DNA of 63,517 bases, filler included, from Octopus bimaculoides (lineage: Eukaryota), in NCBI RefSeq assembly GCF_001194135.2. It is 5 parts of 4 records of this genome, joined end to end, with 100 filler letters (N's around TTAATTAATTAA, not from the genome) between each part and the next. Parts side by side here need not be neighbours in the genome. Positions count along the whole stretch, not along the records: positions 57,333 to 61,025 come from NC_068998.1; 4 more parts are not named here. The stretch is one strand, 5' to 3'. Positions 57,333-61,585 of this stretch are shown here, one piece after another; position 1 is the stretch's first letter, and each line of letters opens with the position of its first letter. Below the pieces are notes generated by a model. It was not told where the DNA came from and searched no databases. It saw only the letters and a program-made list of their open reading frames with translations. The position numbers and the translations under genes are program-made.

Positions 57333-57570
57333 ACAATGTAACCTCCTGGATATCGTTGGCGATTTTTTCTTCCTCCGTCTTCCCTTCTCTGGACTTTCCT
57401 ATGTTTCCGACGAAGAGCTCCGCTCGAAACGTCAAATTCTCTTTCGTTCCTTTCCCGAGCGTCCAGTAATACAATATCTGTATCACGTCCTTGCGTTGTT
57501 GTTTTTTGTTGTCTTTTTGTCGTTTTTCTTTTTTGAACCTTTATATATACATATATATATATATATATGT
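57333..57570 (+). repeat. Short repeat carrying a minimal hammerhead motif (one core substitution)
   Basis: GTTT-CCGACGA-A-GAGC-TCC-GCTC-GAA-ACGT-C-AAAT at 57403-57437. Ends in (TA)n. Confidence 0.65.
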
Positions 57571-57574
57571 GTAA

Positions 57575-57730
57575 ACGACGAACTTTTTCAGTTTCCGTTT
57601 TCCAAATCCACATATAAGGTCCTGGTTGACCCTGGGCTATAGTAGAACACACTTGCTCAAAGTGCCACGCTATGGGACTAGACCTCGAACCATGTGGTTG
57701 GGAAGAAAACTTCTTATCACAGAACCACGT
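57575..57730 (-). mobile_element. SINE family B, 5' half
   Basis: TTTTCAGTTTCCG...GCTATAGTAGAA.ACACTTGCTCAAAGTGCCACGC...AACCATGTGGTTGGGAAG. Confidence 0.85.
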
Positions 57731-58673
57731 GTGGCATGCAAACCAGTAGTGTAAAATAAACTTTTGATCAGTTCAAATATGTTTGAAATATATTTGACTT
57801 ATGAAAAGGTATTTTCATTCCAGTTTGCTATGGAAAGGTGTACACACACCAAAGTCAATTCAGAACTCCTACTATATATTAACTGATGCATTTCCATTTT
57901 ACGTGCCACGCCCAACATTGGTGAGGTCACCATATAACTTGCAAGACAAGGGTCCCTCAATTGAGTGGGGAAATAGTATTGAAGGAGGTGGATTTGTGCC
58001 ACAGCATTGTCTCAAGGTGTAAAGAAATGAGGAAAAAAGAGTGGTGTCGCTAAGTGCAAAACAGAATCGAGGTAATGAACGTTAAGGGCGTTCGATCAGG
58101 TGGTGAATATTAGCAAGGAAAGAGTGGTTACATATGGAAGCAAGAAAAACTGACAGAAGTGATTGAGGGTTTGAATAAAAATGACTTAAATAAATTTTCA
58201 ATAAAATACTTAGAATGTATGGCAGTTAGAATAAATTCATCTTACGTATATTCTTGTGAGAGAAAATGAAAACAGATTTACTTAAAGATCGCTTAACGGA
58301 AAACAATTTATATATATACATATCCAGCAGTAACTTTCCTTGTTTTTAGTCCCAGAATTCTTGAATTCTACTATTCTACTATTTTACTATCATCGGAAGA
58401 TAAATTTACAACCTGGAGAAACAAATATAAACCAAAACAAAACCCAAGATTATTTCTAAAACTAGTCCCGTGAGTACAATTCCTTTCTCTTGATTTGCAT
58501 TAAACACACCGGTCATTCTGATGTGTACTAAATACACTGAACTCTCTCTCACACACACAGATATAGCCACGCATTTCCGAATATATCGACACAAACTTCA
58601 CAACGGTGCATTCACTTTTATACATCAAGTCATCAATAACTGACGTATTGTGTATAATACTGTGCCACTGAAT

Positions 58674-59935
58674 ATGGCCAATGATATTCTAAAACGCCAC
58701 TGGGTAGAAAACGAAATCAGTGCACTGATAAACGCTTGGTACACTCACCATAACGATTGTGTAAAGGCTAATGTCTACAATAAATCGCTGAAAAATTAGC
58801 GTCACAATCCTTTTACAGATCTATAAAACAGATCGAAAACAAAATAAAAGAAATCACAAGATCATTTCATACTTTGCACACGCACATGGCAACACTAGAA
58901 GCTATACTTGTCAATGGATGTAGTGCACCAATTGACCCAACTCCAACAGGTCAGGGGTCACTTCAACGACCCGCTAACCAGCAACAAACAACATCCTCAT
59001 TGACCTAATTCCACCCAAGACTACCGTGGCAAGCCAGGACTCACTACCACAACAACAACAGCTTGCTACTGCTACTATATTGGAAGCACCTTGTTTGGCA
59101 CCACTATCTGACCTGATTCCACCCAGCCCTACTGTTGCAAGTCAAATTTCATTGCCGCTACAACAACAGAAACAACAACAACAACAACAACAACAATAAC
59201 TGTCTGCTACTGCTACTACAGTAGGACCACTGACCAACGAGCCTGCCAGTACAGAAAAACCTCTACTATGCCCACGTCAAAAACCCTGTCGTTACCATTC
59301 ACAAGGTAACTGTAGATTTGGCCCCAGTGGCACCAATAACAAGGGACGCTGTGCTTTTTTCCATCCTACCTTATGCCGTAGACTTGTTAAGGGCACCTGT
59401 CCAAATGGTATAACGGGAACAAACTGCCCTCACCTCCACCCCAAATATTGTCCTAAATACAGAGTCCATGGCCCTGATCCTAAATATGAATGCACAAAAG
59501 GCAATGGATGCACCTTCTTCCATCCTAAACTGTGCCAAACTTCTGTGTCATTAAGAATGTGCTTGAACCCAGAATGCAACTACCACCATCTGAAGGTCAC
59601 AAAACGATCGAAAAATAAATATAAACAGCAACAGAGGAGACCTACAACAACAACAAAAACAAAACACAACCACATTTCACCTCCTACAACCAAACAACGA
59701 AGACAGAACTATGGGAAAACCATAACACCAAATAACATAAATATGAACTATGTACCCTCTGACCAAATGGAAAATCAAAGAGGCAACTCTTTTTTACTGA
59801 CTTATCTAGAAAATATGAAAGCCGACCTAAGCCAGGAGATACAACGGCCTATATGCGACCATTTATGCAAAACACAAAGAAAATACACCCACCACCAACT
59901 AGAAAATCATACATACACAGCTCCATACAAAAACC
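58674..59935 (+). pseudogene. Disrupted intronless ORF: Myb/SANT-like N-terminus + Q/T/P-rich linker + four tandem CCCH zinc fingers (possible LINE ORF1 or retrocopy)
   Basis: MANDILKRHWVENEISALINAW...[fs]LASQSFYRSIKQIENKIKEITRSF...[fs]...polyQ with TAA at 59197, then an open frame 59200-60033 with four C-x7..13-C-x4..12-C-x3-H units at 59287-59589. Interrupted by a SINE near 59940. Confidence 0.7.
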
Positions 59936-59939
59936 ACCC

Positions 59940-60053
59940 TCATGAAATAAAGTGTCTTGCTCAAGAACGCAGCACACAAATCCGGTCTAGGAATCAGACT
60001 CTCTTCTTCACAGTTGTGAGCCCGACGCTCTAACCATTGAGCCATGCGCCTTC
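59940..60053 (-). mobile_element. tRNA-derived SINE head (family D)
   Basis: GAAGGCGCATGGCTCAATGGTTAGAGCGTCGGGCTCAC...TTCTTGAGCAAGACACTTTATTTC. Confidence 0.8.
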
Positions 60054-60084
60054 TATATAATATTATATATTAAGGGAGTCTTTG

Positions 60085-60320
60085 AACCTCATTTTGGGTT
60101 TATGTGCAACAGAACATATGCAACCTATGGAGAGATGTTCCGTTCAGCTGGAGAATTAAAAAGACATGTCAAAAGTCTTCATACTGTGGCACCTTTTCCT
60201 TCTGCGAGCCAGCACAACTGTGCATTATGCAATAAAATGTGCAACCCTTTGGCAGGGCGCAAAAGTCATAGAAAGGCCTCACATTGCGTTATCAATGGCT
60301 CATTCTATGATATTTTCTAG
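60085..60320 (+). mobile_element. Decayed double C2H2-finger fragment, probably an RTE-type LINE C-terminus
   Basis: YGEMFRSAGELKRHVKSLH and CALCNKMCNPLAGRKSHRKASH*, followed by (CTAT)n. Confidence 0.5.
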
Positions 60321-60353
60321 TAATGCTTTTGCTCGTATACAATAGAGCAGCCA

Positions 60354-60389
<36 letters not shown>

Positions 60390-61585
60390 ACGCACACACA
60401 CACACACACACACTCATATATATGAACATGTATATAAACATATATATATAAACACATACACACAATATGAAATTAAATTTGATAATATTGTTACTCGGAG
60501 GTACGTTCTACTGGTTGAGAGAATGGAAGAGAAGAGGGTGGTGAATGAGTAGAGATTTAAATACAGTAGTCTAGTCGAGACGACAATCTATGATGTCTAT
60601 CGTGAAAGAACTGCGTATGTTCCCACAACTGTTGACATTACGGAAGTAGCACTGAAGTCAGGTCAAAGGTCAAAGTAACGCTGAAGAGAACAACTTGCGT
60701 ATTGGTGTCTATGTAACAGCGTTATATTGACGCTAATCTACGTCTATATTAGTTTGTGTATGCATGTATATGCTTAGATGTGTGTGTGTGTGGGGGGGGC
60801 TGCATGTGCGCGCGCATGCGTGTGTGTGTGAATGCTTGTGTTTGTATGCGTGTACTTGTATATACTTCTAGAAGTGTGTGTATATGTGGTAGGGCATATG
60901 TATGCATGCATCTCGTAGTATTGTGTTTGTAAACATGCATACATACGTACACAAACACACGCATATCTATACAAAGACACAGATATATAATATATATATA
61001 TATACATATATATATATAAGATCGGNNNNNNNNNNNNNNNNNNNNNNNNNNNNNNNNNNNNNNNNNNNNTTAATTAATTAANNNNNNNNNNNNNNNNNNN
61101 NNNNNNNNNNNNNNNNNNNNNNNNNATATATATATATATATATAGTCATATGTACATATATGTGTATATGTGTGTGTATGTGTTGCGTGAGAAATAGATA
61201 GATAGAGAGAAAGAGAATGAGAGGAGAGAGGGGGAGAGAGAAAGAGAGGGGAGAGAGAGAAAGAAAGGGAGACAGACAGACAGACAAAAAGAGATAATTA
61301 CAGAAATAATGTTTGACAGCTGTATGGAAAATATTTTGTTTGTGCAAAACAGCAACTCTTACTTACTACTCAATAAAAATGAAATTTGTCAAAAATGAAA
61401 ACCATTAGGTTTACAGCAATGATATAGTGATATATAAATAATAAAATCAAAGCAATTAAGTAATGCTATATTAGTACAAGTAAAATGAGCCTGTATGTTG
61501 AAATAATATGCAAGCCGTGTTTTCCTGCATTCAGATCGAGTTTTTCGGATCGAAATTTACAGCCCCCCCCCCAAAAAAAAGTAGG

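What the first reader, a model, noticed from the sequence alone, without database searches (positions are those of the whole stretch)
58674..59935. Myb/SANT-like domain fused to a four-finger CCCH array in one intronless ORF
Repairing two frameshifts and one CAA>TAA stop gives about 420 aa. It starts with a trihelix/Myb-like pattern (W..NEISALINAW...RSIKQIENKIKEI). Next come two imperfect ~117-bp repeats encoding DLIPP..TVASQ.SLP.QQQ..ATAT. Then four CCCH fingers follow, linked by HPxxC (CRYHSQGNC...CAFFH; CRRLVKGTC...CPHLH; CPKY...CTKGNGCTFFH; CQTS...CLNPECNYHH), and finally a short helix (FLLTYLENMKADL). A putative DNA-binding domain joined to a putative RNA-binding domain in one intronless ORF is not a host architecture I recognise. 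Inference: it is an unusual LINE ORF1 whose ORF2 was lost, or a retrocopy of a lineage-specific gene.
Basis: partly seen in the sequence, partly recalled or inferred. Interest (0 to 1): 0.72.

Follow-up and report, generated by a model that had tools for sequence, protein, structure and literature searches.

The report
Dead octopod LINE ORF1: Myb plus CCCH
This is a broken, cut-off copy of the first gene (ORF1) of a jumping element (a LINE retrotransposon) in an octopus-like genome; its protein joins a Myb/SANT-like domain to four CCCH zinc fingers, a domain mix not listed in the published ORF1 catalogue I could read, though the locus itself is inert.

Summary
From 58674 to 59938 (+) one decayed reading frame of about 421 codons runs through two frameshifts and one CAA>TAA stop. 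Shuffled sequence needs 7-17 such repairs. The repaired N-terminus passes Pfam's own cut-off for Myb_DNA-bind_4 (43.3 bits against 27). Two imperfect repeats follow (108 and 141 nt, not 117), then four CCCH fingers and a conserved helix.

The CCCH-plus-helix part is the ORF1 of an APE/RT LINE. It has 1444 relatives (366 at E<=1e-10). In every related locus I opened that reached past the ORF1 stop, an endonuclease or endonuclease-RT ORF2 follows directly.

Most long relatives carry an N-terminal PHD finger (the known "type III" ORF1 of CR1/L2-like LINEs). None of the 150 best has a Myb domain.

The Myb domain still belongs to the element. A second, diverged copy (L008) has a homologous Myb domain (E=1e-9), then the ORF1 tail, then APE-RT. 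A third copy (L003) shares the linker just after the Myb domain.

This copy is dead. A SINE fragment cuts ORF1 about four codons before its stop, and no ORF2 remains. It is a new domain variant of a known kind. The exact RT clade and any Repbase/Dfam entry could not be checked.

The parts
58300..58673 (+). Putative 5' UTR of the LINE copy (boundary approximate)
   Evidence: GC skew flips from strongly G>C (+0.35 to +0.48 over 57925-58300) to C>G at about 58225-58300. It stays C>G and A-rich through the whole ORF to about 60024. Inference only: no other copy covers this stretch.
58674..58784 (+). ORF1 segment 1 (frame 0): ATG and the first half of the Myb/SANT-like domain
   Evidence: Translation MANDILKRHWVENEISALINAWYTHHNDCVKANVYNK. 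The motif W..EI..LINAW is shared with L008.
58695..58885 (+). Myb_DNA-bind_4 (Myb/SANT-like, trihelix-type) domain, spanning frameshift 1
   Evidence: Pfam PF13837 scores 43.3 bits, E=5e-11, cut-off 27, over residues 8-71 of the repaired protein. BLASTP to the L008 Myb gives 30% identity over 73 aa, E=1e-9.
58784..58796 (+). Frameshift 1 (frame 0 to frame 2, a net loss of one base)
   Evidence: Frame 0 stops at TAG 58797-58799. Frame 2 is open from 58784.
58886..59000 (+). Linker between the Myb domain and the repeats, read in the same frame as the second half of the Myb domain
   Evidence: Frame 2 is open over 58784-59005. Window 58925-58961 matches L003 nt 1-37 at 81% and is collinear with the CCCH match. 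At protein level, SAPIDPTPTGQGS corresponds to ALTDPMATGQVS.
58978..59005 (+). Frameshift 2 (frame 2 to frame 1) in an ACA/CAA-rich run
   Evidence: The open stretches of frames 2 and 1 overlap here.
59001..59108 (+). Repeat unit 1 (108 nt): DLIPPKTTVASQDSLPQQQQLATAT...
   Evidence: the repeat finder families D4 and D7. The same two units are present in L001, and one unit in L003.
59109..59249 (+). Repeat unit 2 (141 nt, with a CAA expansion): DLIPPSPTVASQISLPLQQQK(Q)n..SATAT
   Evidence: D4 is 75% identical at a spacing of 108. D7 is 77% identical at a spacing of 141.
59197..59199 (+). In-frame stop TAA inside the (CAA)n run
   Evidence: L003 has an analogous CAA>TAA at another place.
59287..59364 (+). 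CCCH finger 1 (C-x7-C-x12-C-x3-H), the extra finger of the octopod subfamily
   Evidence: Present in P0001. Absent from most distant relatives, and its AF2 confidence is low.
59374..59439 (+). CCCH finger 2 (C-x7-C-x8-C-x3-H)
   Evidence: The Cys and His ligands are invariant or nearly invariant in 123-150 relatives. pLDDT is above 90.
59449..59523 (+). CCCH finger 3 (C-x13-C-x5-C-x3-H)
59533..59589 (+). CCCH finger 4 (C-x8-C-x4-C-x3-H)
   Evidence: It is the only finger type kept in L008 (one copy) and L009 (two copies).
59593..59718 (+). Basic, low-complexity spacer (K/R/T/Q-rich)
   Evidence: Translation. Predicted disordered, pLDDT about 50.
59785..59844 (+). Conserved C-terminal helix NSFLLTYLENMKADLSQEIQ
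   Evidence: The F and L positions are nearly invariant across the family. AF2 gives a helix over residues 196-231 with pLDDT 91-92 over residues 201-220. Nucleotide identity to L002 is 91% here.
59845..59938 (+). ORF1 C-terminal tail, cut about four codons before the expected stop
   Evidence: Window ..TAPYKNHP| compared with P0001 ..STPYTNSHQCCH* and L008 ..PQYVNHPQCWH*.
59939..60047 (-). Head fragment (about 108 bp) of a tRNA-like SINE that ends the LINE copy
   Evidence: The reverse complement reads GGCGCATGGCTCAATGGTTAGAGCG...GATTCCTAGACCGG...TTCTTGAGCAAGACACTTTATTTCAT. Calling it a SINE is my reading of the sequence. ARAGORN and Rfam find no tRNA.

Best explanation
The finding is a decayed, 3'-truncated copy of an APE/RT-type LINE (non-LTR retrotransposon) in an octopod-like genome. 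The LINE belongs to the Jockey superfamily and is most likely CR1/L2-like. Only a probable 5' UTR and ORF1 survive.

In the ancestral element ORF1 was one continuous frame. It encoded, in order:
- an N-terminal Myb/SANT-like (Myb_DNA-bind_4) three-helix domain;
- a Q-rich linker with two tandem DLIPP repeats;
- four CCCH zinc fingers joined head to tail by HPxxC;
- a basic disordered spacer;
- a conserved amphipathic helix.

The CCCH-plus-helix core is an old, widespread ORF1 module. In most relatives it sits behind a PHD finger. In this octopod lineage the N-terminal module is a Myb/SANT-like domain instead.

Inferred mechanism for the intact protein, by analogy with other ORF1 proteins and other CCCH proteins (not shown here): the CCCH array and basic spacer bind the element's own RNA, the C-terminal helix drives self-association or assembly of the RNA-protein particle, and the N-terminal module (PHD in relatives, Myb/SANT here) tethers the particle to chromatin or DNA.

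This copy cannot do any of that. It has two frameshifts and one stop. Its last roughly four codons are replaced by a SINE fragment, and ORF2 is gone.
For: LINE ORF1 identity:
- An exhaustive HMMER search with window 59200-59970 found 1444 relatives, 366 at E<=1e-10. The best is P0001 at 61% identity, E=2.6e-70.
- In L001 and L002 the homologous ORF ends ..QCCH* and an APE ORF starts about 100-250 nt downstream (LLNVQGINP..FFVLTETHL..GDFNLP..SDHD).
- L005, L006 and L010 have a 442-aa ORF1 followed about 40 nt later by ORF2, whose held part carries the same APE motifs.
- L007 has a 445-aa ORF1 and a 966-aa ORF2 with Exo_endo_phos_2 and RVT_1.
- L009 from Argonauta hians has ORF1 plus an ORF2 of about 1030 aa.

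Myb belongs to the element:
- L008 carries a Myb-like domain (Pfam Myb_DNA-bind_4 E=4.8e-5; BLASTP to the window Myb E=1e-9). It is followed by poly-Q, an SDLP motif, a CCCH finger, the helix..PQCWH*, then APE (68% identical to L002's) and RT.
- L003 shares the linker 58925-58961, which in the window is read in the same frame as the second half of the Myb domain.
- The frameshifts between the repeats and the CCCH part lie at different places in L001 and L003, and are absent in the window. The ancestral frame was therefore continuous.
- C>G, A-rich composition is uniform from about 58300 to 59938.

Family architecture:
- PHD hits occur among 96 long relatives (PF00628 in 19, PHD_4 in 10), with weak CCCH hits.
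- A profile search of the PDB hits KAT6A PHD fingers (3.7e-5) and the RBM22 CCCH finger (4.8e-5).
- Fingers 2-4 and the helix are modelled with pLDDT above 90.

Death of this copy.
Against: - Only one other copy (L008) shows Myb and the ORF1 tail together, and there the CCCH array is reduced to one finger. No second copy with Myb plus four fingers was found.
- None of the 150 best relatives has a Myb domain.
- Two metagenome scans and two word-index protein searches found no further Myb-bearing copies.
- The host genome could not be searched, so copy number is unknown.
- RT clade was not determined phylogenetically.
- CCCH Pfam models are below cut-off on the window copy, and Foldseek against the PDB gave no significant match (best E=0.44).
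- RNA binding, oligomerisation and chromatin tethering are analogies, not results.
- How ORF2 was lost (deletion or rearrangement at the SINE fragment) is unexplained.
Confidence: 0.85

Rival explanations
1. Chance juxtaposition. A 5'-truncated LINE copy, starting in the repeat or linker region of ORF1, landed inside or next to an unrelated Myb/SANT pseudogene. That pseudogene could be a host gene relic or the Myb-like ORF of a PIF/Harbinger transposon. The fusion would then exist only at this locus.
For: None of the 150 best ORF1 relatives has a Myb domain, and most have PHD. Myb_DNA-bind_4 domains are common in animal genomes and in Harbinger-type elements (general knowledge). No other copy with Myb plus four fingers was recovered.
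Against: L008 independently has a homologous Myb domain (E=1e-9) in the same position upstream of the same ORF1 tail and APE-RT. The linker shared with L003 reaches to 58925, about 40 nt from the end of the Myb domain, and is in frame with it. There is no change of composition between the Myb and CCCH parts. No DDE transposase or terminal inverted repeat lies in the piece.
Confidence: 0.07
2. A processed retrocopy, or a pseudogene, of a lineage-specific host gene encoding a Myb plus CCCH protein. That gene could itself be a domesticated ORF1.
For: It is an intronless single frame without ORF2 at this locus. LINE ORF1 domestication is known in general (general knowledge).
Against: There is no poly(A) tail or target-site duplication, and the 3' end is a SINE fragment. 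Every related locus that extends far enough has ORF2 downstream. The copy is broken by two frameshifts and a stop. No annotated host protein with this architecture was found among 5.8 billion clusters.
Confidence: 0.04
3. Two separate genes in the intact element: an upstream Myb-plus-repeat ORF (an 'ORF0') and a shorter CCCH ORF1 that starts near the first finger, as the gene calls P0001 (MLPQAKKEK..) and P0003 (MPYVKTKK..) suggest.
For: In L001 and L003 the repeats and the CCCH part lie in different frames, and a Met precedes the first finger. In the window a stop (TAA 59197) separates them.
Against: The frame change lies upstream of the SATAT motif in L001 but downstream of it in L003, and the window has none. 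These are independent lesions. The window has no Met between the TAA and finger 1. The TAA sits in a CAA run, a single-base change from Gln. Distant relatives have one ORF1 of 400-470 aa with an N-terminal domain.
Confidence: 0.04

Closest known systems
Type III (PHD-containing) ORF1 of CR1- and L2-lineage LINEs (Kapitonov & Jurka 2003; Khazina & Weichenrieder 2009; Metcalfe & Casane 2014, PMC4120745)
   Same: It lies directly upstream of an APE-RT ORF2 (Exo_endo_phos_2 plus RVT_1). The relatives of the window's CCCH/helix core carry an N-terminal PHD finger. The swap of N-terminal modules fits the modular, reticulate ORF1 evolution described in PMC4120745.
   Different: The window copy and L008 have a Myb/SANT-like domain where the relatives have PHD. 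The catalogue in PMC4120745 lists PHD, RRM, CCHC, esterase, coiled coil, transposase_22 and zf/lz, and does not contain the words Myb or CCCH. Whether the catalogued type III elements include this same CCCH core was not tested, because no Repbase sequences were available.
Tandem CCCH zinc-finger RNA-binding proteins (CPSF30, MBNL, ZAP, RBM22, Nab2/ZC3H14)
   Same: Each finger uses Cys3His ligands ending in C-x3-H, and several fingers are packed head to tail. There are weak Pfam zf-CCCH and zf-CCCH_2 hits in relatives (best 5e-5) and a profile hit to the RBM22 finger (4.8e-5). The best Foldseek hits, though not significant, are CPSF30, MBNL2 and ZAP.
   Different: The spacings are non-canonical (x7/x12, x7/x8, x13/x5, x8/x4). 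The HPxxC linkage has the His of one finger three residues from the first Cys of the next. Pfam scores are below cut-off on the window copy, and there is no significant structural match. This is a resemblance in working principle, not demonstrated membership of any one of these families.
Myb/SANT-like DNA-binding domains of mobile elements: the R2-type LINE N-terminus (zinc finger plus Myb) and the Myb-like second protein of PIF/Harbinger transposons
   Same: A three-helix Myb/SANT-type domain is used by a transposable element, presumably to recognise DNA or chromatin (general knowledge; R2 papers were listed).
   Different: In R2 the Myb sits in the single RT-containing ORF of a restriction-like-endonuclease LINE. 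In Harbinger it is a separate protein of a DNA transposon. Here it is the N-terminus of ORF1 of an APE-type LINE, fused to CCCH fingers. No homology to the R2 or Harbinger Myb domains was tested.
L1 ORF1p (coiled coil + RRM + CTD)
   Same: It has the same position and presumed role: a nucleic-acid-binding, self-associating protein encoded upstream of ORF2.
   Different: There is no sequence or domain similarity. No transposase_22, RRM or CCHC hit was found.

Membership tests
LINE (APE/RT non-LTR retrotransposon) ORF1 | The homologous ORF lies immediately upstream of an ORF2 encoding an APE endonuclease and a reverse transcriptase in other copies | tested here: met
   L001, L002, L005, L006, L007, L008, L009 and L010. 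Pfam gives Exo_endo_phos_2 and RVT_1 on L007, and RVT_1 on L008.
LINE (APE/RT non-LTR retrotransposon) ORF1 | This copy itself carries ORF2 | tested here: not met
   tblastn of the L007, L008 and L009 ORF2 against the piece gives nothing below E=0.6. ORF1 abuts a SINE fragment at 59938/59939. This is a truncated relic, which does not argue against family membership.
LINE (APE/RT non-LTR retrotransposon) ORF1 | Many dispersed, diverged copies in the host genome | not testable with these tools
   No cephalopod genome could be searched. Diverged relatives turn up in several ENA, Logan and NCBI samples.
CR1/L2 lineage (Jockey superfamily) of LINEs | RT/APE phylogeny places ORF2 inside the clade | not testable with these tools
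   No reference RT set (RTclass1 or Repbase) was available. The indirect pointers are the Exo_endo_phos_2 type APE, an ORF2 of 966 to about 1030 aa, PHD-type ORF1 in relatives, and 3' ends made of short direct repeats without poly(A) in L009 and L007.
Type III (PHD) ORF1 | PHD finger (C4HC3) in ORF1 | tested here: not met
   The window ORF1 has no PHD. Relatives do: PF00628 in 19 and PHD_4 in 10 of 96, a C4HC3-like pattern in 47 of 150, and the KAT6A PHD at 3.7e-5.
Myb_DNA-bind_4 (Myb/SANT-like, trihelix) | Score above Pfam's gathering cut-off | tested here: met
   43.3 bits against 27 for the repaired 82-aa N-terminus, and 37.9 bits for the whole repaired protein. The L008 counterpart scores 24.1 bits, just below the cut-off.
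Myb_DNA-bind_4 (Myb/SANT-like, trihelix) | Sequence-specific DNA (or histone-tail) binding | not testable with these tools
   This needs biochemistry.
CCCH (C3H1) zinc finger | Three Cys and one His ligands per finger, conserved across relatives | tested here: met
   The ligand columns of fingers 2-4 are invariant or at least 90% conserved in alignments of 96-150 relatives. Finger 1 is conserved in P0001.
CCCH (C3H1) zinc finger | Match to curated CCCH models or solved CCCH structures | tested here: inconclusive
   The window scores 13-18 bits, below cut-offs of 20-31. Relatives reach E=5e-5. The profile hits RBM22 at 4.8e-5. Foldseek's best is E=0.44.
Processed retrocopy of a host gene | Poly(A) tail, target-site duplication, and an intron-bearing parent gene | tested here: not met
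   There is no poly(A) and no flanking direct repeat. A parent gene could not be searched for in a host genome. No annotated protein with this architecture is in the protein collections.
PIF/Harbinger Myb-like protein gene | Accompanying DDE transposase and terminal inverted repeats | tested here: not met
   No DDE domain was found (only noise, E=0.48). The inverted repeats in the piece are microsatellite-based only.

The most novel reading that the evidence does not exclude
The CCCH-array-plus-helix core would be a widespread ORF1 type of CR1/L2-like LINEs in marine animals (octopods, a ctenophore, many plankton metagenome contigs) that published ORF1 classifications have not described as such. 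It would carry an exchangeable N-terminal 'reader' module. That module is a PHD finger in most lineages, a Myb/SANT-like DNA-binding domain in one octopod lineage, and absent in another (Argonauta, L009). The number of fingers would also vary, from 1 to 4. This would be a natural experiment on how LINE particles are tethered to chromatin.
Probability: 0.4. Interest if true: 0.5.

Novelty: new variant of a known kind. Interest (0 to 1): 0.35.

Why it matters
The locus itself is genomic debris. What it points to has some value. ORF1 proteins outside L1 are poorly understood. Here a conserved core of zinc fingers (probably RNA-binding) plus a helix is combined with different N-terminal modules: a PHD histone reader in most relatives and a Myb/SANT DNA or chromatin binder here.

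That supports the idea that ORF1 evolves by swapping modules. It also gives a concrete pair of natural variants for testing whether the N-terminal module directs where, or how well, a LINE integrates. For genome annotation, a Myb/SANT plus CCCH open frame in cephalopods should be masked as a transposon, not called as a transcription-factor or RNA-binding gene.

Tried and rejected
- The word-index protein search with the full repaired protein gave nothing, because poly-Q words swamped the candidate list. After masking, it gave only five hits, none covering the Myb part.
- Two scans of JGI metagenome contigs, one with the full ORF1 and one with a two-sequence Myb alignment, found no relatives.
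- phmmer of the Myb region against the 150 best ORF1 relatives gave no hit.
- ARAGORN and Rfam found no tRNA or curated RNA. The mir-297 and mir-466 matches are TG/CA microsatellite, far below gathering scores.
- Tandem Repeats Finder did not report the 108/141-nt repeat, because it has only two diverged copies. The repeat finder did report it.
- Foldseek against the PDB gave no significant match.
- Kapitonov & Jurka 2003 is not held. A title search did not turn up Khazina & Weichenrieder 2009.
- Cluster look-ups of ten relatives gave no organism names.
- L011-L015 added APE fragments but no 5' ORF1 sequence.
- Harbinger, host-gene retrocopy and two-ORF readings were considered and rated low (see the rival explanations).
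Full report
**What is in the sequence**

The piece 57333-61025 is eukaryotic, microsatellite-rich DNA. An ATG at 58674 opens frame 0 (MANDILKRHWVENEISALINAWYTHHNDCVKANVYNK). Frame 2 continues from 58784 (IAEKLASQSFYRSIKQIENKIKEITRSFHTL...). Frame 1 takes over within 58978-59005 and runs to 59938, apart from one TAA at 59197-59199 inside a (CAA)n run. Three repairs are enough to read 1265 nt. Three hundred dinucleotide-preserving shuffles need 7-17, with a mean of 11.8.

The repaired N-terminus passes Pfam's gathering cut-off for Myb_DNA-bind_4 (43.3 bits against 27, E=5e-11). The two DLIPP repeats are real but measure 108 and 141 nt, the second enlarged by CAA expansion. The four CCCH fingers and the helix are at the coordinates given under parts. 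Pfam's CCCH models stay below their cut-offs on this copy.

**What the CCCH half is**

The word-index search failed at first because poly-Q words swamped it. The exhaustive HMMER search with the exact window frame 59200-59970 found 1444 relatives, 366 of them at E<=1e-10. The closest is P0001 (61% identity, E=2.6e-70). It sits on a 1.9-kb contig (L001) where the ORF ends ..SHQCCH*. An APE endonuclease frame with the motifs LLNVQGINP, FFVLTETHL, GDFNLP and SDHD follows. L002 shows the same layout.

More distant relatives of 400-470 aa are ORF1s placed 40-100 nt upstream of ORF2:
- L005, L006 and L010.
- L007, with a 966-aa ORF2 that hits Exo_endo_phos_2 and RVT_1.
- L009 from Argonauta hians, which carries ORF1 plus an ORF2 of about 1030 aa.

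The CCCH/helix module is therefore a LINE ORF1 core. Its Cys and His ligands and the F/L positions of the helix are invariant or nearly so in 96-150 relatives. AlphaFold models fingers 2-4 and the helix with pLDDT above 90.

**What the relatives have at the N-terminus**

None of the 150 best relatives has a Myb domain. Among 96 long members, 19 hit PHD and 10 hit PHD_4, with weaker CCCH hits. A profile of the family hits the KAT6A PHD fingers (3.7e-5) and the RBM22 CCCH finger (4.8e-5) in the PDB. This is the PHD-containing "type III" ORF1 known from CR1- and L2-lineage LINEs (PMC4120745). That paper does not contain the words Myb or CCCH.

**Does the Myb domain belong to the element?**

I searched with the ORF2 endonuclease of L001 and L002 and fetched contigs with more upstream sequence. 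L008 (3.7 kb, same sample as L002) carries the following, in order:
- HNWSDSEIDMLINAWFSL...RSEKQIRDKLRHIESSF. This scores E=4.8e-5 on Pfam Myb_DNA-bind_4. BLASTP to the window N-terminus gives 30% identity over 73 aa, E=1e-9.
- Poly-Q.
- An SDLP motif.
- One CCCH finger of the finger-4 type.
- The helix (NSFLAMLNLAKEIQ).
- ..PQCWH*.
- An APE 68% identical to L002's, then RT.

Independently, L003 begins with a 37-nt match (81%) to window 58925-58961. This is the linker about 40 nt after the Myb domain, read in the same frame as the second half of that domain, and the match is collinear with the CCCH match.

The frame change between the repeats and the CCCH part lies before the SATAT motif in L001 and after it in L003. 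The window has none. These are separate lesions of one ancestral frame. Composition (C>G, A-rich) is uniform from about 58300 to 59938, and differs on both sides. I conclude that Myb, repeats, four CCCH fingers and the helix made up the ORF1 of an octopod LINE subfamily.

Finger number varies in this clade. The window and L001 have four fingers, most relatives three, L009 two and L008 one. L009 has neither a Myb nor a PHD domain.

**State of this copy**

The window tail ..TAPYKNHP aligns with P0001 ..STPYTNSHQCCH* and L008 ..PQYVNHPQCWH*. ORF1 therefore lacks only about four codons and its stop. At 59939 a 108-bp head of a tRNA-like SINE on the minus strand begins. Beyond it, no ORF2 remnant is detectable. 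A 72-aa C2H2-like frame lies at 60102-60320 and is unrelated, as far as I can tell. How ORF2 was lost is not explained. An ordinary LINE insertion is truncated at the 5' end, not the 3' end, so a later deletion or rearrangement at the SINE is the likely cause (inference).

**Host**

The SINE at 57576-57670 matches several places in the Argonauta hians contig at about 73%, and the nearest named LINE relative is from Argonauta. The window is probably from an octopod (inference).

**Mechanism**

Two things are shown: the domain make-up, and the position upstream of APE-RT. The rest is inferred from established knowledge of ORF1 proteins and CCCH fingers:
- The CCCH array and basic spacer bind the LINE RNA.
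- The helix mediates self-association or particle assembly.
- The N-terminal PHD or Myb/SANT module contacts chromatin or DNA.

Foldseek gave no significant structural match. The best, non-significant hits are the CCCH RNA-binding proteins CPSF30, MBNL2 and ZAP.

**Limits**

- No cephalopod genome, Repbase or Dfam could be searched.
- The RT clade was not determined.
- Only one further Myb-bearing copy was found.
- Two metagenome scans were empty.
- The key older ORF1 papers were not obtained: one is not held, and a title search did not find the other.

**Verdict**

It is a dead relic of a LINE whose ORF1 is a new domain variant (Myb/SANT in place of PHD on a conserved CCCH core) of a known, modular kind of protein. 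Interest is moderate to low for the locus, and somewhat higher for the ORF1 family it reveals.

Noticed in passing
window 57540-57745 (-): A tRNA-derived SINE with a (TA)n tail. The stretch 57576-57670 matches at least four places in the Argonauta hians contig L009 at 70-73%. This suggests the window comes from an octopod.
   Followed up: partly
window 59939-60047 (-): A head fragment of about 108 bp from a second tRNA-like SINE (GGCGCATGGCTCAATGGTTAGAGCG...) abuts ORF1 four codons before its expected stop. The rest of the SINE and the rest of the LINE are both missing, so a deletion or rearrangement joined them.
   Followed up: partly
window 60090-60320 (+): A 72-aa open frame (ATG at 60102) with two C2H2-like units (..FRSAGELKRHVKSLH....CALCNKM..SHRKASH). 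Pfam zf-C2H2 gives E=0.01, below the cut-off. It may be a relic of another element or gene and shows no similarity to the LINE ORF2s.
   Followed up: partly
window 57925-58300: A stretch with strong G>C skew (+0.35 to +0.48) that flips to C>G at about 58300. The flip probably marks the 5' edge of the LINE copy. What the G-rich stretch is remains unknown.
   Followed up: no
L009 8466-8510 and 12877-12925; 8540-8900: The Argonauta LINE copy is bracketed by a 45-nt inverted repeat with (TA)n on both outer sides. A hairpin with arms of about 110 nt lies just upstream of its ORF1. This could be an insertion into a foldback element or a MITE, or a structured 5' region.
   Followed up: no
L009 12840-12880; L007 12370-12405: Just after the ORF2 stop, both elements carry similar short direct repeats: AACCTATCTAAGTGTATCTAAGTGTAAGG and AACCTATCAAAAAGTATCAAAAAAAAGTAAG. 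Neither has a poly(A) tail. This fits a CR1-like 3' end.
   Followed up: no
L008 781-1300: L008 holds a local duplication of the start of the finger (NPKICRYSLRY.. and NPKVCRYSLRERLCTQRDCAFTH). It has only one complete CCCH finger, where the window has four. L009 has two finger-4-type fingers. Finger number is labile in this LINE clade.
   Followed up: partly
window 60760-60970: Rfam mir-297, mir-466 and similar matches (20-31 bits against gathering scores of 64-100) fall on TG/CA microsatellite and are spurious.
   Followed up: yes
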